Below the pieces are notes generated by a model. That model was not told the DNA's origin. It was given only the letters and a program-made list of their open reading frames with translations, and made no database searches. From Klebsormidium nitens (Eukaryota; Plantae; Klebsormidiophyceae): a DNA stretch of 64,000 nt. The stretch's first letter is position 1, and each line of letters starts with the position of its first letter. Positions 3,001 to 58,561 of this stretch are shown here, piece after piece. The stretch spans positions 1 through 64,000 of the forward strand of contig DF237422.1 in assembly GCA_000708835.1 (NCBI GenBank), given 5' to 3'. The position numbers and the translations under genes were made by a program.

Positions 3001-6000
3001 CCTTTGAAAATGGGAACCACTTAACATTGTGAGCGTTTCGACCAGCATCATCAACTGTTTGAATCCTTCGTTTAGATTCCCTGAAGTTAGATCATCCACG
3101 AATCTGGCAGAATCCTTAAGGCAAGTCTGGTTTGGAAGTCCATGACGATCAATTTTGCAAAGCGTTCTGCGTACACTAAATCTTCGCTTGCTGCCCACAA
3201 CTCCCTCAGTAAAGTTGGCAACGTCTGTACTTGGGACGCAGAAATTTCCTTGTAGCGACACATGGGATGGGGGAAGAGGAGCTTGTCGTGGCAACTGCAG
3301 CTTTCTGCAGGAAAATAAAGGCAAAGCGCTTCATATTGCTGATTTATCTTCGTGCAGGCCGCAGTGTGGTTTCTGGGCGAGAACGCAAACTACGCCGCAT
3401 CAGAGTACGCATGGGAGCCGCAGTCAGCGGCGGGCCAGATGCTGATGATGATGGAAGGGGAGAAGATGGTCATGGCGGCAGGAGTCCGTAACCCGACCCT
3501 TGCGGCGGCGCTAGCACGATTGCAGCGGTGTGCGGTGGCAAGTAGCTGGGAGGTGAGTCGGAATCCTTTAGCGGTTTACCTAAGTTTTGAGTTTTTGTTC
3601 TCATCCTGGGTGTCACTCACTGAAGGATGATGGAAGAAAACACGGTTGTCATGGTGCNNNNNNNNNNNNNNNNNNNNNNNNNNNNNNNNNNNNNNNNNNN
3701 NNNNNNNNNNNNNNNNNNNNNNNNNNNNNNNNNNNNNNNNNNNNNNNNNNNNNNNNNNNNNNNNNNNNNNNNNNNNNNNNNNNNNNNNNNNNNNNNNNNN
3801 NNNNNNNNNNNNNNNNNNNNNNNNNNNNNNNNNNNNNNNNNNNNNNNNNNNNNNNNNNNNNNNNNNNNNNNNNNNNNNNNNNNNNNNNNNNNNNNNNNNN
3901 NNNNNNNNNNNNNNNNNNNNNNNNNNNNNNNNNNNNNNNNNNNNNNNNNNNNNNNNNNNNNNNNNNNNNNNNNNNNNNNNNNNNNNNNNNNNNNNNNNNN
4001 NNNNNNNNNNNNNNNNNNNNNNNNNNNNNNNNNNNNNNNNNNNNNNNNNNNNNNNNNNNNNNNNNNNNNNNNNNNNNNNNNNNNNNNNNNNNNNNNNNNN
4101 NNNNNNNNNNNNNNNNNNNNNNNNNNNNNNNNNNNNNNNNNNNNNNNNNNNNNNNNNNNNNNNNNNNNNNNNNNNCACTGAAGGATGATGGAAGAAAACA
4201 CGGTTGTCATGGTGCGACAGTGAGGACCGACTGCAGCAGTGCGCGGTAGCGAGTAGCTGGGAGGTGAGTCACGTATGTTCTCAGTGATCCAGAACTCTTG
4301 TCGCATGATCACGTGTATCTAATCCGCTGGGTATGCTTTTATGGTGGGGATGGAAGGGGAGAAGATGGTCATGCCTGCGGAAGTGAGAAACCCGACGCTT
4401 GCGGCAGCGCTGGCACGGCTCCAGCGGTGCGCAGTGGTGAGTAGCTGGGAGGTAAGTTGGATTTTTCTGTCGAAGTCGTTTGTCAGATACCTTAGGTCCC
4501 GGTGATAGTCAGATTCGGGCTTGGTAGAAGCTAATGATGCAGAAGATGCAACGGGAAGAAGAAGTGAAAGGCGAGAGTTTGTAGGAGGTGAGTCAAATGT
4601 GGCAGCATCTATCCTATGTATTCGGTGCTCATTTCTGTATGGCCGCAGCCTGAGTGGATTTCGATGGCAAATTGGAACGGACATATTCTCGTGGCAGCGG
4701 GGGTGTGGAAACTTACTCCGTTTTGATCATCGTGTCTTCAAAACAAGATCCTACTGTTAAGTTCGAACTTGCGCAGGTACGTGCAGTGGCTGCGCAGGCG
4801 ATCATCACCGTTGCCCGCCGCTCCGGCAAGCCTTACCGGCTCCTCTGATACGCTTTGCACTGTGAAGAATGCCCATCGGCCTGTACGTCAACGACATTTG
4901 CCTTTCATCGGACAAACAAAAGGTACTGTAGTCTGTACATTCCTACTCAAGACGAGCTAACTGCGGATCCTGATTTTCAAGCGCTGGCTCTTGCAGGTAC
5001 GTGTTGTGGCGGCTCAGGCGATCATCACCGTCGCCCTCCGCTCGGGCGAACCGTACCGGCTCCAGTGCTACGAGTTCCTCACGTCACTCTTGCGCGGCGA
5101 GAAGCTGAAGCACAAGCTGCAAGAGCAACAGGGGGTGGCTAGTAGCGGGGAGGACGAGGGGGGGTCCGGGTCGGGGCTCGCGAACGTGGTCGCACCGATG
5201 CTACGGATGCTGGACGAGATCTACACGGCGCAGGACCAGTTTGTGCGGTGAGTAGGGGGACGGAATTTTGCGCAGAACATTTATTTTCAGGTTTCCTGAA
5301 AGTGCAATTGCATCAGATTTGCCGGTCAAATTTGTTTTGGGATATTGATAGGGGTCCGGATTGGGGCTCGCGAACGTGGGCGCGCCGATGCTGCGGATGC
5401 TGGACGAGATCTACACGGCACAGGACCAGGTTTGTGCGGCAAGCGGTTCTTGCGCAGTACCGCTTAAATTTGAATGTTTCTTAAGGGTAGAGTAGAGTGG
5501 AGGGCGGTAAATGTTGGAAAAGTTAAGCGACAAGGTCGGGTTCAAAAGAGGAGTGGACCGAGCTTCAATACACGGTCTCCTTCGCCTCTCTCTCTGCTGG
5601 AAGGGGGACCTTGCAATGTCCTAGTCGAAAAGACTTACTTAACCTTAACTCTAAACTTTAGCAAAGCTCTTAAAGGGATCTGCAGCAGCATGAAAATCCA
5701 AGGAACGGTGGACCGAACCCCAATTGTAGTCGTTCTACACCACGCACGACACCCTCCTTCGCCTGGAAGTCCTTCATGTGCTTCGAAGGCATGTTCGAAG
5801 ATTCTACCCGGAACCTTCTTATTGCAGTTGAATTCGGATTTTCGTTGTCATGCTTGCGGGGATCTCCGGCAACACGAGGTTCCAAGGAAGAGTGGACCGA
5901 ACCCCAACTCGAGTGGCTACACAACACGCACCGACGCCCTTCTTCGACTCGTCTCCCTCTCTGTTTCAAGTAACACCTCCCACTCGGCACCAGCCTTAGA

Positions 6001-41223: not shown

Positions 41224-44200
41224 TTAGTAGCAGTGCTCACTGTACACCTTGTCTACATTCTGGCCCCACTCGTTGTGGTACTTGTCGAGGAGCTTGTCGG
41301 CAGGGCACATGCCTGCATACGGCAAAGGTGGCCACATAAAGCGATGCTCAGGAGATTGAACTCTCAGGTGGAGCAAAGCAAGCGCAGTAAACAGAAGACT
41401 TTTGAGCTGACGCCGTGCAGCCAGGCGACTATCGGTACAGCGAGCGAAACAAGGGGAACAAAGTCTTCTGTGCAATATTCCGAGGCCGACAACAACTCGG
41501 GCCGCCATTAGGCAGGACAGCAGGACTGCGGTTGTATTGACTCCCATGTTTACGACGCCGTTCGAACTTCAAACTCTGCCGTGACTCCAGAAACATGGGT
41601 TACTTTGAGCAGAAAAAGGGATATGATGCAGGCGACCCGCCGATGACACGTGTACCCAGGCTGTTCGCTTTTGCAGAAGAAGGAGAACGCCGACCAAAGG
41701 AGAAAGCTGTACACGGATGTTCAGAAGTGATAGATACCAACGAAGCGTCACCTTACCTGTGCGCGCAATGTCTTCCAGCATCTCAACGTACTTCTCTTCC
41801 TTCAGACCCCGCCTCTCAAGGCCCTCCTGCGAGGAGCGAGGCTATAGTCAGTTACTTGTGTTGTTAAGACTGTCGTTTTCCAAAACGGCCTTCTGTTACG
41901 GTATACTTCCAAGGAAGTGACGGAAGCTTAAATCTGCACCACTTGACTACCACCGGAAGAACAAGTACAAAAATGAGAAAAACACAGAAAAGACTGGCTT
42001 CACAATAGCAAGCGACTGGTTCCTGCGCAACTGGCTGGGCAATCGCTCCTCGGAACGGCGTCAGACGGCGTCCATTCCGCTGCACTCCAAAACAAGCTGA
42101 AACCTTCGAGACGGAACGAGAAACTGAATTTGCAAGTGACAGAAATGAGACAAGAAATTCGATTTTTTTAAGGCAACCTGCGATATTATGCGCAATCCTT
42201 TTGACCGGTCGTGTCTCGAATCGGCGTTGAATAACGTTCCGATCCGCTGCACTTCAAGTCAAACTGAAGCTCTGAGAATGAAATCGAGAACTGAATGTGC
42301 ATGGGCGGAATGTAAGAAGGGCGGATCGGCTTACTTTAGCGAGCTGCACGACTTGATTTGAAAACCTCAAAACTTAGCCGGGACAAGATTTTGCAAGGAC
42401 GAAACGAGACAAGGGCGGATTCGGCTTACTTTGGCGAAGTGCACGACTTTTTGGGCAACCTTTGGACTGTCCGGTCGTTTCTTCAAGGGGCGTAAAAAAG
42501 TCGTTCCATTCTGCTGCCCTTTAAGACAGACAGAAACCTCCAAGACGAAACCAAACAAATAGAAATCACCAAAGACAAACCCACGACGAGGAGAGACTGT
42601 CTTACTTTGGCGAGCTGCACGACCTTTTGCGCAACGTCTTGAACGGTCGTGCCTCGAAACACCGTCTTCAACCCGGTCCTTGGCACGTTGTTGCGCAGCG
42701 CATCGCGCTCCTCTGCGGTCCAATCCTTGATGAGCTGGAGCGCGGCCTGGAGCGACTTGTCATCATAGAGGAGACCAACCTGGTGCCGCAGAGGAAAAGG
42801 TTTAGGAAGGAGCAACTTAGCAGCTAAGAAAAGGGCGCTCCTCTGCGGTCCACGCTGCAGTAAGCTGGAGCGTGGCCTTGATGGACTTGTCGTCGTAGAG
42901 GAGACCAACCTGGTGCCGAAGAGGAAAGAGTTTCAGGAGGGAACAACTTAGCGGCTGATAAAGCGTTCCTCTCCGGTCCAAGCTGCAATAAGCTGGAGCG
43001 TGGCCTTGATGGACTTGTCGTCGTAGACGCGACCAACCTGATGCCGAAGAGGACAACGTTTCAAGAGGGAGCGACTTAGCGGCTGATAAAGCGTTCCTCT
43101 GCGGTCCAAATTGCGATGAGCTGGAGCGCGGCCTGGAGGCACTTGACTTCGCAGGAGAAACCGACCTGGTGCCAAGAAGGAGAAGGCGTGAATTGATGGC
43201 ATCCATTTTCTGTTTGGCATAAGCAGCTGAGGTGTGATTTTGAACGCCTTTATGCACCCAACAAAAGGGCGCTCCTCTGCGGTTTACGTAGCTATGAGCT
43301 GGAGCGCGGCCTGGAGCGATGCCAAACGTGGCATCGTAGAGGAGATCAAGCTGTTTCGGAAGAAGGAAACATTTGGGATGGTGGCTGTCACATTCACCAG
43401 CTACCAAAAGGGGCAGTCCTTTGCGGTGCAGTCGGGAACAAGCTGTACCGCGGACTGGAGAGACTTGTCGGCATAGGGAATTCCACTCTGATGCCAAAAA
43501 TATAACGGGAGGCTTAAACAACCAGATGCCCGGGAGGAGTGGCAAAGCTTGCGAAGGCCCTGAATTGCTATTGTTTTGCGGTGCGTTCTCCTCATCGAGC
43601 TCGGTAACAGACTAGAGCGACTTGCTGTCGTGAAAATGACCTAGTGCCGAGGAGAAGTCAAGAAATAGTTCGAAGCGCAACATGCCAGATACGACAACAG
43701 TGGCTGACAGGAGAAGAAACTTCAGAACGAATGGCGTTTTCACGTGCCCGCCGACAAAGACAATCAAGTCGAGGGGAGGGGTATTGATCACGACGACAAA
43801 GTCCAAACGTGTGAAGATCAAACACCAGTTTAGAAGACTCTGAAGAAGTCGGCTATGAACAGCAATCGTCATCAACCGACTCCCGATTGTGTTGGGGGAA
43901 GGAACTACTGCACCAAGACGAATGCCTGTAGCCGGAAATGGCGTATCAAGTTTGCAGGACTACGGCTGCAGGCGAATAATCGCTTGGATGAATGAAGGAC
44001 GGAGAAAGCACGGGTCTTTCGATGTGCTCACCCAGAGAGCGGACTGCGCAGTGATGTGCTCGGGCGGGCCGTTGTCCGAGCCCCGCATCTCGACGATGTT
44101 CTTTAGCCGCACCTGCGTTGACAAACAAAAGGGATGAGCCGAATTTTCAAAGCTAGAACGGGGTCAGGAATCTCGCTCATGAAGACGCCATGAAAGTGTC

Positions 44201-47200
44201 TCTTACTTCAAACCCTGATTCTGGCGAACCCAGTTCCTTAGAGCTCCAATCTGTCGCAGCTCACCAGAAACACTTCCCTACGTAAAGATGTACAAAATGG
44301 AAGAGGAGCGGTTCAGGACGCGCCTGTCGTGATCTTAACGATCCTATAAAATCTGCACAGACTGCCAGATGTATTCTAATGACGTGCGTTGCAATATCGT
44401 GTCCTGTCTTTGTCGATTGCCTTCTGATGGATCCATTCGCTCTGACAAAGTACACAAGACAACGATCGTCATCGAAGATGCTATCATCTGAGTGACTAGC
44501 CTCACCTCCGACAGTATGCTGTTGAGCTGGTTCAACCAGTCCGCCATAGTTGGGTACTTTCCAGGGAGGGGCTCGAGCTTGCCAGCCATGAAGTCCTGGA
44601 AACAATGCACCGTGGTTGAGGGTTGGAGGAGAAAGCAAATGGGTACAATATCTGAGCTGCTACCGTCGTTTTGCAATTGACACCGGCTAAAAGTTTTGCA
44701 CTTGACATCGGCTGAACGAACTGTACTTACGACTCCTCCTTCTGTTCCGTTGAGCGGACAGGAGTGTGGATCTTCCACTGTTTACCAAGTAATTGAGATC
44801 GTTAGCAAGGATACTGCGCGTCTCAGCGCAGTGCCATCGAACCCTCGAGCTAGATCCCACAGCCCGCTGCCTGTTGGGTGAGCACCGAATGCAAAAAACC
44901 CTCAAACTCTACGAATGCACAGAACCCTCCATGAAAAGATGCAGCACAAAGCGTCAGTTTCTGAGCCTTGACACATTGAAACTTACCTTGAAATCCAGTC
45001 CCAGGGCCTTGACGTACTCCTTCCCATTCTGGACGTAGTACATGGGCACGTCGAGCGCCCAGTCTACAAATTTCTCAAACCTGTAACGAACAAGGTTGCC
45101 GCATTAGGGCATCAACTTACAAACATGGCCACAATTGTCGTAACGTTGATTGTTATTGCGGAGTTCGTCCGAGCTGATACCGTTTCTTATTCTACCATCG
45201 TAATTCTAAGACAGTCAGTCTGGCCCAATGGCAATTTGGGCGATCGCATGGTGTATGTGGGCAGGGGGCGGTTTCCTTCGTTAGTAAAAAGCGAAGCTAC
45301 ACAGCGTGTCCGCAACTTAGTCCGTCGCGGCGCTCATCTTTTCCAACCAATGCATGGATTCAAGCCAATCAATCGTAGACGGCCTAGCTTTGCGAATCCC
45401 AGGGATAGCCCCCCGTTCGCAATGGAAAAACATGCCGCTATCACCACTGGAAAATTTTCGAATGAAACCGAAGCGAAGTATTGTAAAGGCAAACGTTCTC
45501 AAAACGCACCCAAAGTCGTCGTCGAACACGAACGGCAGCATTCCGGTGCGGTCCGGGTCGGTGTCGGTCCACGTGATGCTGCGGTAGCTCACGAACCCGC
45601 TGGGCTTCCCTTCGTAAAACGGCGAGTTGGCGAAAAGCGCTGTGGCAATCTGGGGGCAGAAAACTCGAGAATTCAAAAACCCCGCTACCCGAACCACGCT
45701 TCTTTGTTTTGGCCGCAAGCCTGGTGGCTCGGAAAAACTACCACCCGCCGCCGCGACAGTCAATCTGCATTCTCCACCTTGCCGACTACGCTGTCAGCGA
45801 GACTTTGATCAACCGCAGCCTCCATCGCTAAGTAGGTCCAACAGGAATGGTGTACCAAGAGAATAACAAGTTACGTTCGCGTTCAAAGAAACTCACCGGT
45901 TGCAGCGCCAGACCGACGCGCATCTTGTTCACCATGTCCTGCTCCGACTCATAATCGAGGTTCACCTGCACAAAAACGACGATAAAATCATTCTGAAGTT
46001 GCGGGATCTCATAGGTGTTTCTATCCGCAACGCAGCCGTTTATCCAGGACCCAGCTGTCTTCTGACGGGTGCCGAGACATTCAGATGCCGCGCACAACAC
46101 ACCACCTTTTTGCTGTCAGACCAAAGTTGACAACGAGCCCTGGTTCGTACCTGGACCGTGCACGTGCGATACATGACGTCATGTCCGTGCTCCCCCTTCT
46201 GTGAGATGAGGTCACTGGCCAGGATGTGCCGCTCCTTGGGAATAGTCGGAGATGACGTCCACTTCGGATCGAAGCCTAGGGTCAAGAAACCTGCGCCGAG
46301 CTCCTTGCAGACTGCCTTAACCTGGAAATGAACCCGGATATGATGTTGATCTGAATGACCCGAGTTGAAACCGAGTTTGAAGACCGAAACTCATTTTGGG
46401 CCAAAGCCAAGGGTCAAAAAACCTGCGGCGAGCTTCTTGCAGACTGCCTTTACCTGGATATGAAGCTGGATATGAAGCCGAATATGACGCCACTTCAGAT
46501 GGGCTGAAAGAAACAGAGTAAAAACATCTCCAGATTGACTTGAGCGGACCCGAATATTTTTAGACTAACCCGAGGTTTCTAGCTAATCCCCTAAGCTCTT
46601 CCACCCGAAAACCTAAACGTTTATCCTGCAACATAATCACGATCACGGTGGAGTAGATAAGCCGGCTTCAACTTCAACTAATACAGGTTTGGTGAGGCAG
46701 GTTGCCCGGCTCTTCACGAATCGCTTCGACCTGAAAAGTTCTGTAATCGAGTACATTGACTCCTAGCCATTGACGCAAGGTTTCGAACCACTGGCGGAGT
46801 GCTCCCCCGCTGTATCACATTCTATACTGTTCTCATGAGCACCCCAGAAGGGCGGCGTCGAACGAGCTGCTGAAATCCCACGTTTGCCGAGGGGGCATCT
46901 GAAAATCAAGCAATGCATATTACACCCACATACTGGAACGCTCCCAACCTGGAACGACACTGCTGACAACACGTCCAGATGGGAGTGTCCGCCTGTCACC
47001 TTCGTTCCAGATTGTTGACTGATCTTCAATGAAAACATTCGACATTCTTTCTGCATCTTGTGGAGCCTGCTGGAAAGTGATCAATGCTCGCGATTGGCCC
47101 CCGAAGCCCTGACAGTCCCGACTTCTCATGCAAACCATACGTGTGCATCTTGCTTACTTCAGCGCACTCCTCTTCGCTTCATACAATTGGGCCGAGCTTG

Positions 47201-49394
47201 CTGAGATCATAAGGACGCGATGTGAGCAGACTCCGTACCCAGTACCTCATTTGAGCACTGTGAAAAAGAGGAACATGATTGGAGTATGAAGAAGAGGTTA
47301 GTTGAACCGACCTGACTGATGTGGTTGTTAACCTCCTCAAGCGTCTCATGCAACGTCTTGAACGGCGCACCACTCAACTCGAGCTGGCCCCCAGGTTCCA
47401 ACGTGATGCTGGCACCGTTCTGGAAATGAAATTCTGTCAGCATATGGTGCAGTTTACAGTCAAAAACCAAATGAGGACAAGGATTCGGATCAAGCTCAAG
47501 ATGAGGAATGAGATCGATTCTCTGCAGCAACGGTCCGTAGTATCTGCATTCTTGATGACAAACTTGTGGCCCGATGAGAAAATAGTACTGTGTTGATGCA
47601 GCTTGTGTGCCAGCAGCTCTTACCGCCAGCATTCCAGCTTGATGCGTGCATGGATTCCAAAGCAATCCTTGGTTGCGACGCTAACATGCTTCAAAAAATA
47701 TCATGTGCCAGAATGTCGACTTTACTAAATGTTGACCAGTACAGTCTTAAGAGGCCTGCCGCTGCCAAAAGTAGCGATTGCTTTCTGCGGCTCGGAGGAT
47801 CAGGGGGTGATATGACAGACTCAACGCAGATTTACAGATCTGTTGAAAACATCTCCAGAATCGTGTCTGGAAAAGTCTGATCTGAAGGACGATTAGAAGA
47901 CGAAATTTCCACGGAGAAAGCTAGGGATTCCGAAAGCCGTTCACATGAACGGTTGCGTCGCCAATTGTGAAAGTATGCTATGCGAAAGAGATCTCTTATG
48001 ATTGAATTTAAGCTTTTTTCCAGGGGAGATTCGAGCGTAAGTGAGTTGAACCAGCTTAGCAGAAGACTCGTTCAATCCTGATTGTAGGCAGTAGAATCTT
48101 CCGATGACATACCCCAACAGAACAATATGCCAATCTTTTCAATCAATCTGAGCAAGCTTACTTAGGTAATTCCTGTCAAATGCATTCCAAGATGTTTTGA
48201 AGGTCACCTGCTTGAGCGCGAGCAGGTTGCCATGTTCAAACGACCGCTCCCACCCAAACTTATCCGCTAGCTTTCCCAGAATGGTGCGGATCTCCTCGTA
48301 GGTCAGACGCTTCTTGTCGCTGACCCGGAAACCAATCTTCTCATGCTCGGTCCCAATCCTGTAGACATTTCAAAACATCCGATAAGTTTGAAAATTCCTG
48401 CTCCTTGACATTAGCTCTGACAGATGCCTCTTGTCACAGCCCGGAAGTTTTCTTCTTCTCATCCTCAGGTTCAGTGGCAAGGTGGACAGACGCAGTGTTA
48501 CAGATGCAAGGCTCTTTCATTCAAATATTGCAATATATCTCCCAATTCAATCTGGCATTGAGCAAAGAGTGCCTCTGCTGTAGGTTTTTTCGCGGAAAGT
48601 GGACCTCCTGGTCGCTTTGACTGAGCCTGTGGTTGACCCGACAGCCCGGTCTACTTATGAAAGCCATAACAACTCTTGTTAAGAGATTCCAATTGTGGCT
48701 CATTGGTTTTGATGAAGAAGCTGAGTTGTAGCCACATAGTTTGTGGTCCATTCTTTGTTGAATACATTGTGACTTAACAGTAGCTTTCATATACCCACCC
48801 ATTTGTAACGACCACCTTAGAAACAACATGGTGAATGGCAAACCCAATGCTTCAGAGCTTATTCTTGGCTGAATGAGCTAGCAAAGTGCAAAGAACACTT
48901 GAGCTAGAACCACATACAAAAGAAAGGCGCTGTGAATCCATTCTCTTATGGACACTAACACACTTACAGAAGTCTTATTCAACCATGGCGGCATGTGATA
49001 CGTCATGCATGCAAAGGAATAGCATCTACAAGCAGATGCAACCTGCATCCTCTACCAGGAATTCTCATGAAACAGGCGCCAATGTGTACATCGGCTTATC
49101 ACACATGCAAAAAAGTAAGTTCCCAGAGCATGAGAGCAAAATCCTAGTTGCACTTCACATACCACCACATTGCATCACAACATCAAAGATAGGACTGGAT
49201 CAACAATTGAAATTCTGATGAATTACCAAGGTGGTCTCTATATCCTCTCACACAGCCGGATTGAAGCATCAGACTCACCGCCACTGGTCCCTTGGAGTGC
49301 ACGCCTTTTTGAAGAAGTCAACAAGATCTTGCTTCGTCAACCTGGCTTCCTCTCCATTTTCCCCCTTGGAGCCGCTCGCTTTCTGATCAGCCAT
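41224..49394 (-). CDS. Divergent plant-type glutamate-cysteine ligase paralog (GCS2 family), 450 aa, no transit peptide
   Basis: 12 exons: 49394-49279, 48358-48208, 47419-47312, 46321-46151, 45965-45897, 45649-45510, 45080-44987, 44595-44506, 44112-44032, 42779-42606, 41826-41757, 41312-41224; 1353 nt, GT-AG, no internal stop. Motifs [62 protein letters not shown]. Confidence 0.93.
42780..43500 (-). repeat. About 5-6 serial decaying copies of the acceptor plus 5' end of exon 42779-42606
   Basis: agctggagcg.ggcc...gacttgtc.tc.tag...gaccaacctg.tgccg recurs at roughly 125-nt spacing upstream of the real exon. Confidence 0.9.
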
Positions 49395-50455
49395 CTTTCT
49401 TGACAAGTCGAATGATACCTTTTGTCCCTACCTGTCCGACTGACCTTCCCCCTGAAATTCCCAGCTTCGCGAAGATCACGCTGCTCTGTTCCTCCAAACA
49501 AGAACGTCTGTGTGGGAAAAATGGCAGTGGCAATTGTTGCCTTCCTTTTCGAAGCTGGGAGGGATTCTCTCTGCTGCGTCCATAGGGGATCACTACCGTT
49601 CGATAGCACGCCATGCACGCCAAGAAGGCCACGTTTGGCGCCAGCGCTGTTCTGCTGCACCGCCATGTTCCAACTTCCACCACTTGTCGCTTCCACTGCA
49701 ATTGGCGCAATTGCGGGGCATAAGCTATGCCCTGGAAAGTCAAAAGTTTGGCTCCTCTAGTTACAAGCCTGCTGAAGTTACTACGGTAGTACTACCGTGG
49801 TATGTACCAGCCGACCAGGTACCGGTATTCATTGTGCAGAGTCGGACCTTTCAATCATTGAGCTCTTCAGGCCACTGTAATTGCGTCAGAATGACGACAA
49901 CGTTGAACGCAGAATTCGCTCTGTCTTATCTTCAAGTTCTGTTCTTAACCGCAACTTCTCCCGCAGCCAAGTTTCTGGCGCTTCTGAGATTTGTAGAGTA
50001 GGTATCGAAGGTAGTACTAGAAGGGAGGTCCTTTAAACTTTTAATATCCGCTGTAACCATGTAGCGGGTTAGGTCTTACCTACGTTAGCAATCCAATCCA
50101 AATCGGGTTACGAAAACAACATGGAATGATCCTGAATCTTAACACAGCATTTCTAGCGCTATCATCATGTACGGTTCCTCCGTATTTTGGTGTTCAAAGC
50201 GCTTTCCTGGTCCTGCTGGACTGCAGCAGCGCTGCCCCGTCACTCATCCCTGGCGAGTCCGCGCAATCTGGATTGGCTCTTTTGCGCTGCTCTGAACATT
50301 TTGTGGCGGCTTCAAGTTGGTCCTGTTGACAATCTCTGAGCGAAGTGCAACCTGCCACATTCATCGCTTCCATGCAGATCTTCATGCAGCTCGTCTTGCG
50401 CACGGAGGGCGTCGTTGGCCAGACTTAGGGGTAAGGACGGATCGGCATTTGCTCG
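49395..50455. promoter_or_regulatory. Putative bidirectional promoter/5'UTR interval between the two GCL genes
   Basis: 1061 nt between divergent start codons at 49394 (-) and 50456 (+). No specific cis-elements identified. Confidence 0.5.
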
Positions 50456-53400
50456 ATGGCGGACGGGGCGACCATGAGGGCAGCCTGCGGGCACGCTCTT
50501 CCTCACCACGCGCCTCTTGGTCAGCGGCAGGGATCCAGGCAGGAAGCATCCGTTTCTTCTAGGCTTGTGAATGTGGGCCCAGGACGAGTCCACAGGCATG
50601 CTTCAAATGCACGCGCCGGCCCACAGATCTTGCCTCGGATACGACAAAATTGTCTTGCTTCTGCACCGGTTGGTTGTAGAAAGAAAAGCTTAGAGCATGC
50701 AGTTCACGGGAGGCATCGGCTAGAGGGATCGGTATCGAGGTTGAGCGGAGGGTCTGACTTGAAGTCAGAATCGACGATGCACAGAAGAGGGAAAGGGACG
50801 ATTGTTGCCGCAGGACCGCCGACTGAGGAGGTTGTCACGGATACGAAGATGCTGACAAAGGCTGACCTTGTTGAGTACATGAAGAAAGGATGCAAACCGA
50901 AGGAGAATTGGCGGTAAGAACCGCTGCAGTTTATTGTCAGATTCAATCCACAAGATTGACAAGATTGATAGATTGTTATCCTGGTCTTAAGGACCGACTT
51001 GAATCTATCTCAAATGTGGCTTCAGCTTTTCGATGGTGGTACATCTGTTCGCTAACCCTAATCTGCCATTCTGTGCTTATGTTTTGAAGATGCATCAACG
51101 GTGCATGTCATGGCGATTTCTGGATATGTGATTGGTCCGAGATTCAAAAGGCCGCCAGCCTTTCGGCATTGGTGGATGAGGCCCAAACATCAACACTATT
51201 GGCCTCTTTGAGAATTTTCTAAGCATGACACTACGGTTTGTATTCTTGCCTGGCTTGTTGGAAGCACATTCTGATGTCCTGGGCGGAGCTAAGAGAGCAA
51301 AGGGCTGCAGATTGCTCACGATCAACAGCGTCCAAGCGCTGTCACCTTCCCGCTTCGAACTTGACATCTGATACGATCCACCTTCAAGTTCCAGCAATTT
51401 GTGTGACAACTTGATTACCACAAGCTGAAAAGCTGGCCTCTGAGTTTTATCTCTGCTTGTTTTGAAAGAAAGTCTGTTGAAAGAAAGAGAGGATGGATTC
51501 TCTACAGCACAGATTCGAATCAAGCTGACGGTTTCCGTTTCTTTTTGTAACCTGCATGAAACAATTGCATATTTAGTTGATGTTTTCTGAGTCCGTTTAT
51601 AACCTGCACAAAATGCTTGAACTTTTTACTCTTATCCCTCCCTGCATTTCAGAGCAGATGTGTAACACAGAGGTCATGAAAAGTAAGGTCAGAAAACTCA
51701 CTCTAATCATATCAAGTTAAGATTTGTCAGGGTCTGACTGTACAGCACCTGCTCTGCAGCATAGGGACTGAACACGAAAAGTTTGGGTTCAAGTTTGAGG
51801 ACAAGCGGCGGCTAAACTACGAGGAGATCCATCAGCTGCTTGAGGCGCTGGCTGACCGGTTTGGATGGGAGCGGGTGTTTGAGAACAACAAGTTGATTGC
51901 ACTTAAGCAGGTAAAACAAGAAGCAGTCCCCTTCCATATGATCTGGAATTTGCAGTTCATGGATGAAAGCAATCGTGCTTTCTGAGGGCGTTCGGCGATT
52001 GGTTTTACACTACTCATCATTGGCTTTTCGGAAAGTGGTATAAGGTACATAATGATGCTAATGAAGACAATTGTTGCTTGTCCATCCATACAAACGCTGC
52101 GAGCTGATGCATATTCAAATATACTGTAGTGACAATCAAAGACTTTGGAGTTAGCAGCTGACAGATGTGATCAAGTGGACGAGCCTTTTCCCCCCGAGGA
52201 ATACTAGCAAGTGCTTTGAACCTTGAGACACGCTTCATGCTCAAGCAGGGGTGCTAGGCTCGAGCTAGATGACCTGCCTCCTTCACTACTTCCTTTATTA
52301 CAAGTAGCTGATTAGTAATTTGCTTCGTCCTGCAGAGCGGCCAAAGCATCACGCTAGAGCCAGGGGGTCAGTTTGAGCTGAGCGGGGCCCCCTTGAGCAC
52401 TCTGCACCAGACATGTGGAGAGGTCAACAGCCACCTGTATCAAGTGAGGCTGCTGAGCAGCCTTTGTTGCCACTGTCCCTCATTTGACATTGCCATCTGG
52501 TGGGAGAAATCCTGCTATCTGCAGTTGCCACCTATGATTAAACCACCACCCCGGGTATAACTCGGGGCAAACCGGCTGGCATTCGCTCCAGCGGCCACCG
52601 AAATTCAAATTTCGGCCCGAAGGCGCCCGCTTCCAGCTTGTGCATTTTTGACCTTATACATCAAAGAAACTAAAGCATTACTTCACCGTTTTAGGCGGTC
52701 TTGCTTTCTAGAGCTCTATCTTAGTGGTATCAGCAAGGCCAGGTCGAAACCGCCGCTTAATTCGTGAAGGAACGGCCTGTTTTAATGTAGGCAAGGGTAC
52801 CTTCTTTATGTGTGCGTCCAGTGTGCGCCCGTCGCGAATTCAAGTTGCGAACTTGATTATGAGCATTCCTGGTTACCAGGAGTATTTATACCTTGGGTGG
52901 TGGTTTAATCGTGGAGGATTGGTCAAGGGGGTTTGTGAACTGAAATACCTGTCGTTGTGTCCAAGGGCTAGGAGATGCTGAGTCTCCTTATGGAAAGGAC
53001 GATATAAAAGTTTGCAGTCATTCGAGACAGGATCAGGAACTCCCTAGGTCTGACAGAAAGGCTGCCAGAACAGCAGATTCGCAATAGTGAAGGCTGTGTT
53101 CAAGAGTCCACTTCAGAACGACTTCCTGTGTTCAGCATGGTCTGGTATTTGGATGCCGGCAACCCCTCACTGATAAAAATAAGGAAAAGAAGGCAGAGGA
53201 CATTCACCTCACTGATTGGTACCTGACCATAGAAGCTGAGAACAAGCACGTATGCAATGAAATGCTCTGTAACGAGCAACAAAGGAGTGCGCCCTATCAT
53301 AGATCAGGTCCACAAGAGACTGGTGCCACGTAGTGTGCCACCGTAGTGTGCGACAATGACAGTACTTTCAAATAGTGAGTTTGCAGTGCCGCTGTGACAG

Positions 53401-56400
53401 GCTCTTTCAGTTTACATATTTGCTTTGATTGCCCTTTCAGGTGAAGACAGTCTGTGAGGAGATGGGTGCCGGCTTTCTGGGGCTCGGTTTCGACCCCAAG
53501 TGGAGCATCGAGGACATTCCGATCATGCCAAAGGGCCGCTACAAGCTGATGAAGGAATACATGCCGCGCGTGGGGTCTCACGGGCGCGACATGATGTTCC
53601 GCACATGCACCGTGCAAGTCAACCTGGACTTTGACACCGAGCGCGACATGATCAACAAGATGCGGGTCGGGCTGGCTTTGCAACCGGTGAGTTTGGGGGT
53701 TGGCTCGCAGGGGTGAGATGACGTGTCAGAGGGGAATTCATAATATCATCGAAAGGATGGTACTGTTGACACCGAGCTCGACATTGTGTAAGAGATGCGG
53801 GTCGAGCTGGGTCTCCAACCGTTCGGATCTAACTCGCTCAGTTGATGAATGGCCTGCTTTTAAACGGACATGACATGTCATCAAGGGATATCATGATCAT
53901 ATTGTGCCGGCAAACACACGGAACATCCGGACGGCTGGAGCTGCATCTGGTGTCTTCCAGAGGTCGATCTAAACGTAGAAAAGGCAGTAGTTTACGATAG
54001 TCAGAAGCCATCTTCCAGAGCTCCCATTGTGCCAACCGCTCGCGCTTTGCTGACCCGTCTAGTTCCACCAGCAGCCCCGTGCTGACTCCCTATCTCGATC
54101 ATGTTTGGCAGAAGCTTACAAAGGCTCAAGTTTCTCGCTTGATCATTGAATTCTTTTGCTTGTGACATGATGGACTTCTCACACTCTCTTCTGCACACCG
54201 CTCGCTCTTCGCTAACCAACTCCGATCTACACCCCTTCAGATCGCGACGGCTCTGTTCGCCAACTCCCCATTCACTGAGGGCAAGCCCAACGGCTACCTG
54301 AGCTTCCGAAGTCAAATCTGGAAAGACGTGGATCCCCACCGGACGGGCATGCTGCCGTTTGTCTTTGACGATGATTTTGGGTGAGCCGTTTTGCTGGACG
54401 CTCGGCCATGGTCGACCCAGATGCGACATGCAACTGACTAGTTAGAGTAGCTTTGAATGGAATGGAGAGAGAGGACTTGTCTTTCGTGCTTCAGCAGCTA
54501 TTACCAGATTTACAGTAGCCGCTGTCACGGAATGCTGTCAGTTGCAATGATCATCTGGAGGGGTGGGGGGGAGTCGAGACCTGAAACAGTTGCTTCTCGT
54601 CACGGTTTCAAAGCCTATGTTTCGGAGGCAGACCGCAGATATAATCCAAGAACCAGAGATCGGGATTTGGACGCTTGTGTTTGGACTATCCACAGACCGA
54701 CTCTGAGCTCTGGCCTCGAATATCGAAGCTCTTTGGGCCTAGCACTCGTTTGATCAGAAAGCCTTAACCCCGCTCTCGAACCCTGACCTCTAACCTTGAA
54801 TTAGAAGCCTGGCATTCACAATCTGGATTGCGACCGTCCTCTTCAGACTTGTCCGGAAGATTGAATCTCGGAGCGAATGTTGCAGGTTCGAAAAGTACGT
54901 AGACTACGCTCTAAATGTGGCAATGTACTTCGTGTACCGGAAGAAGGGGTACGTGGACGCTCTTGGGCTGGACTTCAAGGTATTGACCGCAGCCTCGTTG
55001 ATTTTGCCGCGTTAATCTGTTTTCCGTAAATGTCGCTTTTACTTCCATCAGCATATTTGCAAATATGGTTTTGTATGTTGAGTGCGAGTACTTTGGCTTG
55101 CTTTCTCATGACCGATTGCCGTCTGTCTACTTTTACGGTTTGCCTCCTTCCGGCCGATTCTCTTTGGTCCATCATTTTTCTTTGGTTTGCCTTTCTCCTT
55201 AAGCGACCAGTTTGAAAGGAGGACACTCATGGCGAGCACGACTTTCGAATTTTGGGCTTTTGATCCCTCATTTTCAATCTGGCTCGCCAGAACGATGCCT
55301 ACAGACACCTGGCATACCTTATCGGTGACATTACGTCCCAACATGCAGCTTTTGATCGCTTGACTTCCCATTCCGGTGGTGCATCCACCGAGATCGTATC
55401 GATCAATCATCACTGGCACAAACGTAGCCGGGATGATTTAAGATTCAAACCTACTGTCAAACCTACTGTAAACCACACCCGCTCCCAGTGTCATCTGCTA
55501 ACCTGTTTCGCTCTGCCACGTGGCTAGGATTTCATGGCGGGCAAATTGTCGGCCCTGCCCGGAGAGTATCCGACAATCAACGATTGGGAAAACCACCTAA
55601 CCACCATCTTCCCCGAGGTAAGCAAAGCGCGGCCAACTTCCTCACATCCCCGTACTCCTAGGACGGTTGTGAACTCCCATCTTCTCCATCGTCAAATCAG
55701 CACCATTGTTTGCCCTACTGCTCTAGTGGACCATTGAGTGGATGTGTATTTGTACGGTGCAAGCTATACGAAGGAGCCTTTGATCACAATCCAGCCTTGC
55801 AGGCCGCCACGACAGAGACCTTAATTTCAGCTGTCAAGAAACTCACCTCATATTCGACCTGTGTCGGACCTGTGATGTTTCGAGGAACATTTTTGCTGTG
55901 AATCTCATCTTCCTTTTGATTGGCTTTGAACAGTTCTTTGCGGCCTTATTTAAGGGCCAGACACGTGGCACTGAAAAACGATATTAGTTCATCCCTTCTG
56001 ACGTGATTCTCAATTGTCAAGGCTCGGCGCTATCGACAGCCGTGGTTTGCGTTTAGCCAGGGATGACACGTATCGCTATCGGAGGCAAATGTGGACATCA
56101 CTTGAGAGTCGCCAAACTGGTCCACACACAACCAATCAATCCCCTCACTTCAACCATTGCTGCCAAGAGATATTTCAAAAGCGACGTATTTGACGCAGCA
56201 AGTGCCTCGGATTGAATGTCTCCCGAGACGAACCCCTTTGTGACCACGCCATCTAGAATCCGCCCAAGTCCGAGATGAGAAAACTTTCTCGAACCATTGG
56301 CAACATTTACATCGCACATACTCATGAGCACCCAAACGCTCGCAAAAACGTACCTCCAAGCCCATTCCACGCACAGTAGGCCGCCTCTTACCCGCCCCAC

Positions 56401-58561
56401 TCTCGCCGCAGGTACGCCTGAAGAAATATATCGAGATGCGCGGCGCGGATGCGGGCCCGTGGAAGTCGTTGTGCGCGCTGCCCGCGTTGTGGGTATGTCC
56501 CCGCAAACCCTAAACCCCGGACCGCTCTGCTCACGCACCGTCTTTTTCCTCGTCCGAATGCTGCAGGTGCGACTGAAACGGTACATTGAAATGCGGGGGG
56601 CGGATAATGGGTGTGTAGACCTGATTCTGGGGCAGTCGGCCATGTGGGTGAGTCGAGAAGGAGGCGGTTAGAAGGGCCTCCGTACCGCTGTCACTCCCAT
56701 CTTCCGAGTCGGTTTTAGAAAGGCCTGCATCATGTTTCATGGAAGCAGACTTTCCTTACATCATCGGTGTGTGAGAGCTGGATGTTACGAGGATTTATAC
56801 ATCGGGTCTGGAACTCTCGAGCTGTTGCTAGAGGGCTCAACTTGAAACACACCACCTTGTGGGGCAAGGATAACGCTCAACCGAGTGCATTCCACATCTG
56901 GTTTCTCAGATTTGTGCTGCAAAGAAGGTTGCTGAAGGGAATCCGCTGTTTCATAATCTGTCGGGCCAGTCGTTTCGCCCAATATTGTTTCCATCCTTTT
57001 ATTACAAGAAGTCCTCCTTAAATCGTGTCATGAAGGCCTTTCTGCTTGATAAGCTCCCCCCTTTCCTTTCCCGCACCCCTCTGTATTGGAAGAAAGTCTC
57101 GGGCTCCTTCTGGAAACAGGGGTGTCCCAATCACGGTCACCCAGTCCTTGCTGCAAGCGACTACCAAAGTGATTCCCCTGACTCTCAGTCGCCCAAAAGG
57201 CGGTGGATCGGAGGACGCCATCTACTGTAGCCCCTCCCGATTGCTTTGCCCCACTCTCTGCGCAGAACACGTCACCTTAGCATACTCTAGAGCGGCAACC
57301 ATGATAATTGCCGTCCCGACCACATTGGAATGTTCAGCTGGAACGCAACCGTTGCCTAGTGATGAACCGTTTAATGAAAGGTGTAGAGTAGATTTTCAAT
57401 CCGCACTGCCTCTGTCCCATCGCAGCTGGGGCGGTCGGACCTTTGTTTTGACAAGGAGTCGCTCTCAAGGGTGCCTGGACCCGAACCCCGACTGTTTGAA
57501 CCCTCTATTCAAAACCGTAGTCGTCCACAAGCAGGATCAACCTCAGTGTACCAAAATCCTTTTCTCCTTTCCCCCGTCACAGGTCGGGCTTTTGTACGAC
57601 GAGGAGTCGCTACAAGGCTGCCTGGACCTGATCTCCGACTGGACGACTGGCGAGATGCAAATGCTGCGCGACAAGGTCCCGGTCACCGGCCTGCGCACGC
57701 CCTTCCGCGACGGCATGGTCCGCCACGTGGCACAGGATGTTCTCAAGCTTGCGAGGGTGAGCGTTCGAGGACCCTCCTTTTGCATACCGTACAGAACATG
57801 ACATCGTAACAGCACAGAGGGGGGATCATCAAGTGCATGTACACGCAACTCTTTTTGACAGCACGGCCACTGTCCTGAAGCTCGCGCGGGTGAGCTCCCA
57901 AAAAACGCGTTTTGATTCGGAGCGGCTTGAAAGCTGCAAGCTTCGAGAGGTGCACTTCCTGAGTACCGTGCATTATTGCGCGCCCTCTGGAGAAGTCAGT
58001 TTGCTCAAAGTCCTTTCCAAGTCGCATTGGTTAGCGTACAAAGACTTCCAATCTGAAAAGCCTGTTACTGCCCAGCGTACGCATTTGTGTGGTTTATGCT
58101 AAATGGCTTAGTGCTTTGATTCGTTCCCGTTGTCTGGGTTTGCCATTTGTGCATTGTTGGAACAGGACTTGGAGGTCACGCTTATAGGAGCATTTACGTG
58201 CATACTAGAACCGTTGCTGACAGTCTGTTTGCTTGCTTTCCACAGGAGGGCCTGGAGCGACGCGGCTTCAACGAGGCTGAGTTCCTGAAGGGTCTGGAGG
58301 ACATCGCACGAAAAGGTGAGGCATTTGCGCGGGACAAGTTCGAAGTAGGAACAGATATGCAGACTCCGACGGCGCTGAAATATCAACGGACACGTACTCA
58401 GACAAGTGGGTTCTAATAGTAAAAGGTGTGCATATCTCACGCCCTCTGAACAAGTGCCTTCTTCTTCTGCAGGAGTGACGTCCGCTGATGTCCTGCTTGA
58501 CAAATATCACAACGAGTGGGACGAGGACGTAGACCGAGTCTACGACGAGTTTCTCTACTGA
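50456..58561 (+). CDS. GSH1: Glutamate-cysteine ligase (gamma-glutamylcysteine synthetase), plant GSH1 type, with ~115-aa transit-peptide-like extension; 566 aa using exon 8a
   Basis: Exons 50456-50913, 51760-51910, 52336-52443, 53441-53686, 54241-54380, 54886-54979, 55528-55617, 56412-56492 (8a), 57583-57756, 58246-58315, 58473-58561. Motifs [88 protein letters not shown]. Confidence 0.96.
56567..56647 (+). CDS. Second copy of GSH1 exon 8 (8b), candidate mutually exclusive exon: [27 protein letters not shown]
   Basis: ctgcag| 81 nt |gtgagt; same length and phase as exon 8a, no stop, catalytic EMRGAD intact, 8 synonymous versus 1 nonsynonymous difference over the first 13 codons. Confidence 0.8.

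What the first reader, a model, noticed from the sequence alone, without database searches (positions are those of the whole stretch)
44506..46321. Cysteine-acceptor pocket of the GCL paralog is remodelled while Glu/ATP/Mg residues are kept
+ copy: [34 protein letters not shown]. - copy: [18 protein letters not shown] (plus a 2-aa deletion upstream), [16 protein letters not shown]. The changed positions (RY->RH, M->A, YMP->LIS, FP->LS) are those recalled as lining the Cys/BSO pocket, in the segment hit by Arabidopsis rax1-1 and cad2-1. GTEHEK, LEPGGQxELS, TCTVQVN and EMRGxD are unchanged. The prediction is an ATP-dependent gamma-glutamyl ligase for a non-cysteine amino acid or amine, an activity I do not know to be described for plant-type GCLs.
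Basis: partly seen in the sequence, partly recalled or inferred. Interest (0 to 1): 0.85.

Follow-up and report, generated by a model that had tools for sequence, protein, structure and literature searches.

The report
Expressed GCL paralog with rebuilt acceptor site
This green alga keeps and transcribes a second copy of the first glutathione-making enzyme whose glutamate/ATP side is intact but whose cysteine-side loops are rewritten, so it may join glutamate to something other than cysteine, though only an enzyme assay can show that.

Summary
The minus-strand gene (CDS 41224-49394, here KnM) is an intact 12-exon, 450-aa plant-type glutamate-cysteine ligase. It lies head-to-head with a canonical copy (KnP, 50456-58561). 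Spliced ~2 kb RNA contigs from four studies confirm nine exons and ten junctions. Every quoted motif is present; TCTVQVN is only restored by splicing.

- **Age and selection:** synonymous sites between the copies are saturated while dN is 0.29. KnM is therefore an old, selectively kept gene on a roughly ten-fold longer branch.
- **What is kept:** the catalytic motifs, the four reported glutamate ligands and Arg220.
- **Where the changes fall:** changes at family-invariant positions pile up in two segments (11 of 23; Fisher p 2e-6). One is the loop carrying Arg220 and the cad2-1 site. The other is [12 protein letters not shown], next to zir1.
- **Family model score:** the pocket exon loses half its TIGR01436 score (44 vs 89 bits).
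- **A second case:** an independently arisen Adiantum paralog changes many of the same positions.

I could not measure distances in the BSO-bound structure or find KnM orthologs. A non-cysteine acceptor is plausible (about 0.4), and a cytosolic cysteine ligase with altered kinetics or feedback is nearly as likely. Other first-stage notes of this scan cover this same stretch; none is on other DNA.

The parts
41224..49394 (-). KnM: complete coding region of the diverged GCL paralog. It has 12 exons and encodes 450 aa, with ATG at 49394-49392 and stop at 41224-41226. Exons: 49279-49394, 48208-48358, 47312-47419, 46151-46321, 45897-45965, 45510-45649, 44987-45080, 44506-44595, 44032-44112, 42606-42779, 41757-41826, 41224-41312.
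   Evidence: All splice sites are GT-AG and the ORF is open. Junctions of exons 1-9, and 9->10 via the loose end matching 42748-42777, are seen in spliced contigs of 4 runs from 4 studies. Junctions 10->11->12 are inferred from homology and GT-AG. An in-frame stop lies 10 codons upstream of the ATG.
46151..46321 (-). Exon 4, the 'pocket exon' (KnM residues about 127-183). It contains segment [19 protein letters not shown] (46193-46246), the 2-aa deletion, DVMYR and TCTVQ.
   Evidence: Its TIGR01436 score is 44.0 bits against 89.4 for the same exon of the + copy. Changes at near-invariant positions: M152I, Y157H, M160A, Y163L, M164I, P165S, V167K. Arg156 (= Bj Arg220) is kept.
44506..44595 (-). 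Exon 8, containing segment [12 protein letters not shown] (44506-44538; KnM 303-313), in place of [11 protein letters not shown].
   Evidence: Changes are E304L, H306Q, T308N, T309S, F311L, P312S; E313 (= At E385, the zir1 site) is kept. TIGR01436 score is 19.2 vs 40.3 bits.
48337..48354 (-). GTEHEK motif (KnM 41-46), kept. E45 aligns with the reported Glu ligand StGSH1 E116.
   Evidence: PMC12884754.
47372..47401 (-). [10 protein letters not shown] motif (KnM 96-105), kept except F102L.
   Evidence: L occurs at this position in 13 of 67 family representatives.
45966..46150 (-). Extra GT-AG intron that splits TCTVQ|VN. The + copy has no intron here.
   Evidence: (joint 45963->46149, CT..AC on the + strand).
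44032..44112 (-). Exon 9 with EMRGSD (EMRG at 44080-44091). It lacks the Cys406-equivalent and resembles alternative exon 8b of the + copy.
   Evidence: C->T at KnM 334; C->L at KnM 116 for the Cys186 equivalent.
42705..43322 (-). Tandem 128-nt repeats inside intron 9. These are degenerate copies of the acceptor plus the first part of exon 10. The mRNA uses only the last, intact copy (exon 10 starts at 42779).
46394..46465 (-). Partial duplicate of the acceptor and first 72 nt of exon 4, lying in intron 3. It ends in a stop and is not in the main mRNA.
49395..50455 (.). 1,061 bp between the two divergent start codons. It holds the 5' UTRs and probably a shared promoter region.
   Evidence: The KnM contig continues at least 56 nt (and 220 more contig letters) upstream of the ATG.
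50456..58561 (+). KnP: the canonical GCL copy. It encodes 566 aa, has an N-terminal extension of about 130 aa, a canonical pocket, and alternative exons 8a (56412-56492) and 8b (56567-56647).

Best explanation
KnM is a functional, transcribed, probably cytosolic paralog of plant-type glutamate-cysteine ligase. It arose by an old duplication of the neighbouring canonical gene. It keeps the half of the active site that binds Mg-ATP and L-glutamate and forms gamma-glutamyl phosphate (inferred from retained residues). The loops that form the acceptor (cysteine) side have been rebuilt. The most likely consequence is a changed acceptor preference: an ATP-dependent gamma-glutamyl ligase that prefers, or additionally accepts, an amino acid other than cysteine. 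Because Arg156 (= Arg220) is kept, the acceptor probably still carries a carboxylate. Loss of Tyr, Met, Phe and Pro side chains suggests a differently shaped, probably roomier and more polar pocket. Shown here: gene integrity, expression, long-term constraint, and the location and rarity of the substitutions. Inferred: that these residues shape the acceptor pocket, and that specificity has changed.
For: 1. Real gene. It has 12 GT-AG exons and an open 450-codon frame. Spliced ~2.0 kb contigs occur in 4 runs from 4 studies at word depths 18-195.
2. Old and constrained. Against the + copy, pS is 0.77 (saturated) and dN is 0.29. KnM is sister to the + copy (SH-aLRT 98), with branch lengths 2.34 vs 0.22.
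3. Glu/ATP side kept. GTEHEK, LEPGGQxELS, TCTVQVN and EMRGxD are present. The equivalents of the StGSH1 Glu ligands E116, T251, R301 and W305 are all retained.
4. Changes at invariant sites are concentrated. Eleven of 23 lie in residues 150-168 and 303-313 (Fisher p 2.3e-6). Among 131 family cluster representatives, the motif MPKxRYxxMxxYMPxVG has Y in 126/129, M in 124/129, Y in 118/128 and M in 121/128. KnM has H, A, L and I there.
5. Link to the pocket. Arg220 is described in the cysteine-binding pocket (PMC6463388). The cad2-1 residues P237, K238 and V239 are exactly the YMPKVG loop, and zir1 E385 ends TIFPE. All gsh1 alleles are stated to surround the active site (bioRxiv 10.1101/2025.09.18.677034).
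6. Family-model score. The loss is local: the pocket exon scores 44.0 vs 89.4 bits and exon 8 scores 19.2 vs 40.3, while exons 5, 6, 10 and 12 are unchanged.
7. Independent parallel. The Adiantum paralogs P0075 and P0133 branch with ferns, and an AU test rejects a common clade with KnM (p 0.0012). They change 13 of the same universal positions (expected 3.8). Their new pocket is 88% identical between two Adiantum species, against 82% overall.
Against: - No distance to the ligand was measured. Pocket lining rests on one literature statement about Arg220, on mutant positions and on conservation.
- Arg220 itself is unchanged.
- cad2-1 plants still make 15-30% of wild-type glutathione, so this loop tolerates change while cysteine remains the substrate.
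- KnM is diverged throughout: 74 of 261 plant-conserved positions change, against 26 for the + copy. Raw identity of the pocket exon (58%) is no lower than that of exons 9 and 10.
- The positions shared with Adiantum are somewhat more variable than other universal sites (1.85 vs 0.57 deviant plants). On the strictest 89 sites the overlap is only 3 (p 0.022).
- No KnM ortholog was found, so selection on the new pocket itself is untested.
- No candidate acceptor or product is known.
Confidence: 0.42

Rival explanations
1. KnM is still a glutamate-cysteine ligase. It would be a cytosolic isoform without the redox switch, whose remodelled loops change Km for cysteine, glutathione feedback inhibition or stability rather than the identity of the acceptor.
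For: - Arg220, all catalytic motifs and the Glu ligands are kept.
- GSH occupies the same tunnel, with its glycine carboxylate on Arg220, so changes here could tune feedback.
- cad2-1 and rax1 alleles in this loop only lower glutathione levels.
- KnM lacks the N-terminal extension and both Cys186/Cys406 equivalents, which fits a change of compartment and regulation.
- Other GCL families bind cysteine with unrelated residues (general knowledge).
Against: - Bacterial plant-type GCLs are reported not to be redox-regulated, yet they keep the canonical loops. These residues therefore do not look like regulatory extras.
- Seven near-invariant residues change at once in one loop, plus H306Q, F311L and P312S.
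- The summed exon scores fall well under the curated equivalog cut-off (376.9 vs 463.15 bits; the + copy reaches 493.6).
Confidence: 0.38
2. KnM has lost efficient catalysis. It would persist as a weak enzyme or as a non-catalytic protein, for example a binding or regulatory partner, and the pocket changes reflect relaxed constraint on acceptor binding.
For: - It sits on a ten-fold longer branch, and 28% of plant-conserved positions are changed.
- Truncated GCL-like copies with degraded pockets exist in Quercus, Morella, Rosa and Riccia. This shows the loop decays when constraint is lifted.
Against: - Catalytic and Glu-binding residues are all kept, although synonymous sites are saturated.
- Substitutions are concentrated, not spread evenly.
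- KnM is full-length, correctly spliced and well represented in RNA assemblies.
Confidence: 0.13
3. KnM is a transcribed pseudogene.
For: Decoy partial exon copies lie in introns 3 and 9, and low-depth unspliced contigs cover part of intron 9.
Against: The frame is open for 450 codons across 12 exons with canonical splice sites, even though dS is saturated. dN/dS is far below 1, and GC3 is 0.77, like the + copy.
Confidence: 0.03

Closest known systems
Plant-type glutamate-cysteine ligase (GSH1; TIGR01436, Pfam PF04107 GCS2; structures 2GWC/2GWD, 6GMO, 9UFC)
   Same: All ten tested exons match TIGR01436 colinearly, at profile positions 24-446. The exon phases match those of the neighbouring canonical gene. 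Catalytic motifs, Glu ligands and Arg220 are kept. Identity is 64% to the + copy and about 56% to land-plant enzymes.
   Different: There is no transit peptide and no Cys186/Cys406 equivalent. Seven of eleven key positions of the MPKxRYxxMxxYMPxVG loop and six of the [12 protein letters not shown] segment are changed, and there is a 2-aa deletion. The summed exon score is below the equivalog cut-off.
Adiantum GCL paralogs (P0075 GOP47_0026840 of A. capillus-veneris; P0133 of A. nelumboides), uncharacterised
   Same: They are full-length plant-type GCL paralogs beside canonical fern enzymes. Both segments are rewritten (MPQNKIKVMRNCFDISG; DWGNHLTQLYGE), and 13 universal positions are changed in common with KnM.
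   Different: Their origin is independent. The replacement residues differ. Arg220 becomes Lys, LEPGGQ becomes LEGGGQ, and a Glu-ligand Trp becomes Tyr. An N-terminal extension is present. No function is known.
Homoglutathione synthetase of legumes (a paralog of glutathione synthetase)
   Same: It is a precedent from the same pathway: a duplicated ATP-dependent ligase changed its acceptor (Gly to beta-Ala) through a few active-site changes (general knowledge; mentioned in PMC3606967).
   Different: It belongs to a different enzyme family (ATP-grasp, second step), and its function is proven biochemically.
YbdK/EgtA-type carboxylate-amine ligases (GCS2 relatives; TIGR02050, TIGR03444)
   Same: Same superfamily. 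Weak matches to exons 3 and 6.
   Different: KnM matches the plant-type model far better. These relatives are bacterial and are also annotated as cysteine ligases or weak ones.

Membership tests
Plant-type GCL (TIGR01436 / PF04107) | Colinear full-length sequence match to the family model | tested here: met
   Ten exon peptides hit TIGR01436 at successive profile positions 24-446. The best structure matches are 2GWC, 6GMO and 9UFC.
Plant-type GCL (TIGR01436 equivalog) | Whole-protein score at or above the curated cut-off of 463.15 bits | tested here: inconclusive
   The spliced protein has no reference, so only exon pieces were scored. The sum is 376.9 bits for KnM against 493.6 for the same ten pieces of the + copy. 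Exons 1 and 11 were not scored. KnM probably falls below the cut-off.
Plant-type GCL | Catalytic / metal / Glu-binding motifs: GTEHEK, LEPGGQxELS, TCTVQVN, EMRGxD, and the StGSH1 E116/T251/R301/W305 equivalents | tested here: met
   The Glu ligands are as named in PMC12884754.
Plant-type GCL | Conserved Arg220 of the cysteine-binding pocket | tested here: met
   KnM R156 aligns with At R228 / Bj R220; PMC6463388.
Plant-type GCL | Near-invariant acceptor-side loop MPKxRYxxMxxYMPxVG and segment [11 protein letters not shown] | tested here: not met
   KnM has [17 protein letters not shown] and [12 protein letters not shown]. The loop positions are 92-98% conserved in 131 cluster representatives.
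Plant-type GCL (streptophyte plastid enzyme) | Redox-switch cysteines Cys186/Cys406 and an N-terminal transit peptide | tested here: not met
   KnM has L116 and T334 at the two cysteine positions. The ATG lies 18 codons before the conserved core, with an in-frame stop upstream. The literature notes that some green-algal GCLs also lack these cysteines.
Plant-type GCL | ATP-dependent ligation of L-Glu and L-Cys; inhibition by BSO | not testable with these tools
   This needs an enzyme assay.
Gamma-glutamyl ligase with a non-cysteine acceptor (proposed) | Preference for another acceptor; a corresponding gamma-glutamyl product in the cell | not testable with these tools
   The tools here cannot assay this, and none of my ten paper searches was aimed at such products.

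The most novel reading that the evidence does not exclude
Two streptophyte lineages, Klebsormidium and the fern Adiantum, independently turned a spare plant-type GCL into a gamma-glutamyl ligase for a different acceptor by rewriting the same two active-site segments. This would point to unknown gamma-glutamyl metabolites, and to a compact specificity code for this enzyme family.
Probability: 0.33. Interest if true: 0.8.

Novelty: new variant of a known kind. Interest (0 to 1): 0.6.

Why it matters
Plant-type GCL is treated as a single-function, rate-limiting enzyme of glutathione synthesis. None of my paper searches turned up a paralog of it with another acceptor, though no search was aimed squarely at that. 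A maintained, expressed paralog with an intact glutamate/ATP half-site and a rebuilt acceptor half-site is a direct, cheap biochemical target. The protein is only 450 aa and needs no transit-peptide trimming. It could reveal a new gamma-glutamyl compound in an alga close to the origin of land plants. Together with the Adiantum case, it could show which residues set acceptor specificity in this family. If it proves to be an ordinary cysteine ligase, it would still show cytosolic, switch-less glutathione synthesis alongside the plastid enzyme.

Tried and rejected
1. **Protein id for the spliced KnM.** I wanted one for homolog search, ortholog search and structure prediction. It was not possible, because the 450-aa sequence has no contiguous reference and I did not type it.
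2. **Scaffold-plus-exon alignments as profile queries (A1-A3).** MAFFT mis-aligned the fragments, and I reproduced this offline. A simulation showed KnM would still rank below the 120 listed hits, so I dropped this route.
3. **Searches for relatives of the pocket exon.**
   - 1.84 billion cluster representatives: best identity 54%, and no hit lacks the 2-aa insert.
   - 5.8 billion proteins of fragment length: nothing found.
   - JGI metagenomes: only a canonical bacterial GCL, L001.
   - KnM orthologs therefore remain unknown. The clustering and length filters mean this is not evidence of absence.
4. **Region search with the Adiantum pocket.** It found only the two Adiantum proteins.
5. **Literature.** Hothorn 2006, Galant 2011 and Ball 2004 are not held. 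The supplementary contact table of PMC6463388 is not held. I therefore have no residue-level contact list. All ten paper searches are used. None of the 15 listed hits of the Klebsormidium/GCL search mentions Klebsormidium.
6. **Neighbouring genes.** Pfam scans of ten large ORFs elsewhere in the window gave nothing, so there is no neighbourhood clue.
7. **Pseudogene reading.** Rejected on ORF integrity, splicing and dN/dS.
8. **Single ancient origin of the KnM and Adiantum paralogs.** Rejected by the AU test.

Full report
**What is there**

The window is intron-rich eukaryotic DNA of about 50% GC. Earlier notes of this scan name the genome as the streptophyte alga Klebsormidium nitens. I did not verify the name. 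In my tree the canonical copy branches beside the land plants, which fits.

Two plant-type glutamate-cysteine ligase (GCL) genes lie head to head. Their start codons are 1,061 bp apart. I call the minus-strand gene KnM and the plus-strand gene KnP.

**Observation check**

The 2-aa deletion upstream of the first segment is also real.

The finding's limits, 44506 and 46321, turn out to be true exon boundaries.

There is one correction. In KnM, TCTVQVN is interrupted in the DNA by a GT-AG intron (45966-46150) that KnP lacks. Splicing restores the motif.

**Gene model and expression**

I laid contigs of four runs from four different studies on 43500-49450.
- Each run holds one spliced contig of about 2.0 kb with eight identical joints.
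- All joints are CT..AC on the + strand, which is GT..AG for a minus-strand gene.
- There are no sequence differences, and word depths are 18-195.
- The contigs' loose end beyond exon 9 matches 42748-42777 exactly.

With these joints, plus homology and GT-AG sites for the last two junctions, KnM has 12 exons and an open frame of 450 codons.

The ATG at 49394 is preceded by an in-frame stop ten codons upstream. The protein begins only 18 residues before the conserved core, whereas KnP has about 130 extra N-terminal residues. KnM is therefore probably not plastid-targeted, as another first-stage note also proposed.

**Age and constraint**

KnM is 64% identical to KnP, its closest relative, and about 56% identical to land-plant GCLs. 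KnP is about 70% identical to land plants.

In a maximum-likelihood tree KnM and KnP are sisters (SH-aLRT 98). The KnM branch is 2.34 against 0.22 for KnP.

Synonymous differences between the two are saturated (pS 0.77), while dN is 0.29. An intact 12-exon frame after that much time means purifying selection. The pseudogene reading is very unlikely.

**What is kept**

GTEHEK, LEPGGQxELS, TCTVQVN and EMRGxD are present.

The residues named as L-glutamate ligands in the potato GSH1 crystal structure (E116, T251, R301, W305; PMC12884754) align with KnM E45, T178, R228 and W232.

The arginine of PKGRY (Bj Arg220 = At R228) is also kept.

**What is changed, and whether it is special**

In an alignment of 118 land-plant GCLs, 261 positions are at least 95% conserved. 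KnM differs at 74 of them and KnP at 26. KnM is therefore diverged in general.

A stricter set gives a clearer picture. I required the plant consensus to be shared by KnP and by at least three of four bacterial plant-type GCLs, which leaves 156 positions.
- KnM changes 23 of them.
- Eleven of the 23 fall in residues 150-168 and 303-313 (Fisher p 2.3e-6).

Across 131 cluster representatives of the whole family, the loop MPKxRYxxMxxYMPxVG is nearly invariant. The counts are Y 126/129, M 124/129, Y 118/128 and M 121/128. KnM reads [17 protein letters not shown].

The second segment, [11 protein letters not shown], reads [12 protein letters not shown] in KnM.

Raw identity of the pocket exon to KnP (58%) is no lower than that of exons 9 or 10. 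What differs is which positions are hit. This shows in the exon-by-exon scores against the NCBIfam equivalog model TIGR01436:

| Exon | KnM (bits) | KnP (bits) |
|---|---|---|
| Exon 4 (pocket exon) | 44.0 | 89.4 |
| Exon 8 | 19.2 | 40.3 |
| Exon 9 | 17.0 | 39.4 |
| Exons 5, 6, 10, 12 | unchanged | unchanged |
| Sum of ten pieces | 376.9 | 493.6 |

The curated cut-off is 463.15 bits.

**Link to the cysteine pocket**

I could not obtain the 2006 structure paper or any coordinates, so this link is indirect. Three points support it.
- I checked mutant numbering on an Arabidopsis-type sequence, P0228. P237-K238-V239 (the cad2-1 lesion) is exactly the PKV of YMPKVG. E385 (zir1) is the E of TIFPE. 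C186/C406 are the known switch cysteines.
- A 2025 preprint states that all six gsh1 alleles surround the active site.

That each changed side chain touches the acceptor remains unverified.

**An independent parallel**

The only other full-length sequences in my sets with both segments rewritten are two Adiantum proteins, P0075 and P0133.
- They branch with ferns, and an AU test rejects a common clade with KnM (p 0.0012).
- They change 26 of the 156 universal positions, and 13 of these coincide with KnM's 23 (expected 3.8).
- Their new pocket is 88% identical between the two species, against 82% overall. This suggests the new state is itself conserved.

There is a caveat. The shared positions are somewhat more variable than other universal sites. 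On the strictest 89 sites the overlap is only 3 (p 0.022). The parallel is suggestive, not decisive.

Truncated GCL-like copies in Quercus, Morella, Rosa and Riccia also have degraded pockets. This shows what simple decay looks like. Unlike KnM, those copies are not full-length.

**Interpretation**

KnM keeps the machinery to activate glutamate and has a rebuilt acceptor side. I consider a changed acceptor preference the most likely reading (0.42).

A cytosolic, switch-less cysteine ligase with altered kinetics or feedback is nearly as likely (0.38). Arg220 is intact, glutathione binds in the same tunnel, and plants with lesions in this loop still make glutathione.

Against that rival, bacterial members of the family are reported not to be redox-regulated, yet they keep the canonical loops.

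A weak or non-catalytic protein (0.13) and a pseudogene (0.03) are less likely.

**Limits**

- The spliced protein could not be handed to the protein, structure or cluster tools, so I have no KnM orthologs, no model and no whole-protein family score.
- Searches with the pocket exon found no close relative. The filters make this weak evidence.
- None of the 15 listed hits of the Klebsormidium/GCL paper search mentions Klebsormidium.
- Other first-stage notes of this scan cover the same stretch. They are not independent support.

Noticed in passing
window 42705-43322 (- strand, intron 9 of KnM): Four degenerate tandem copies (128-nt period) of the acceptor site plus the first part of exon 10 lie upstream of the real exon 10. 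The main mRNA uses only the last copy. The copies could act as decoy acceptors.
   Followed up: partly
window 43500-44059: Low-depth contigs in three runs (depth 19, 6 and 5, against 195, 116 and 59 for the main mRNA) cover the 5' part of intron 9; the X1 contig runs unspliced from exon 9 into it. This may be intron retention or a minor isoform.
   Followed up: no
window 46394-46465 (- strand, intron 3 of KnM): A partial duplicate of the acceptor and first 72 nt of the pocket exon, ending in a stop codon. It is absent from the main mRNA.
   Followed up: partly
window 45966-46150: KnM has an intron splitting TCTVQ|VN where KnP has one continuous exon (53441-53686). This is an intron gain or loss since the duplication.
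   Followed up: partly
window 56412-56492 and 56567-56647: KnP carries two 81-nt alternative versions of the EMRG exon. 8a has the canonical Cys406-type sequence. 8b lacks it and resembles KnM exon 9. Another report of this scan covers this.
   Followed up: no
P0075 / P0133 (Adiantum capillus-veneris, A. nelumboides): Fern GCL paralogs in which both acceptor-side segments are rewritten, Arg220 is Lys and LEPGGQ is LEGGGQ. They are uncharacterised and were found only in Adiantum in a 5.8-billion-protein search.
   Followed up: partly
P0036, P0059, P0030, P0102 (Quercus suber, Morella rubra, Rosa rugosa, Riccia sorocarpa): Truncated GCL-like proteins of 177-293 aa with degraded pocket loops, probably decaying partial duplicates.
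   Followed up: no
window 3658-4175: A run of 518 N, which is an assembly gap.
   Followed up: no
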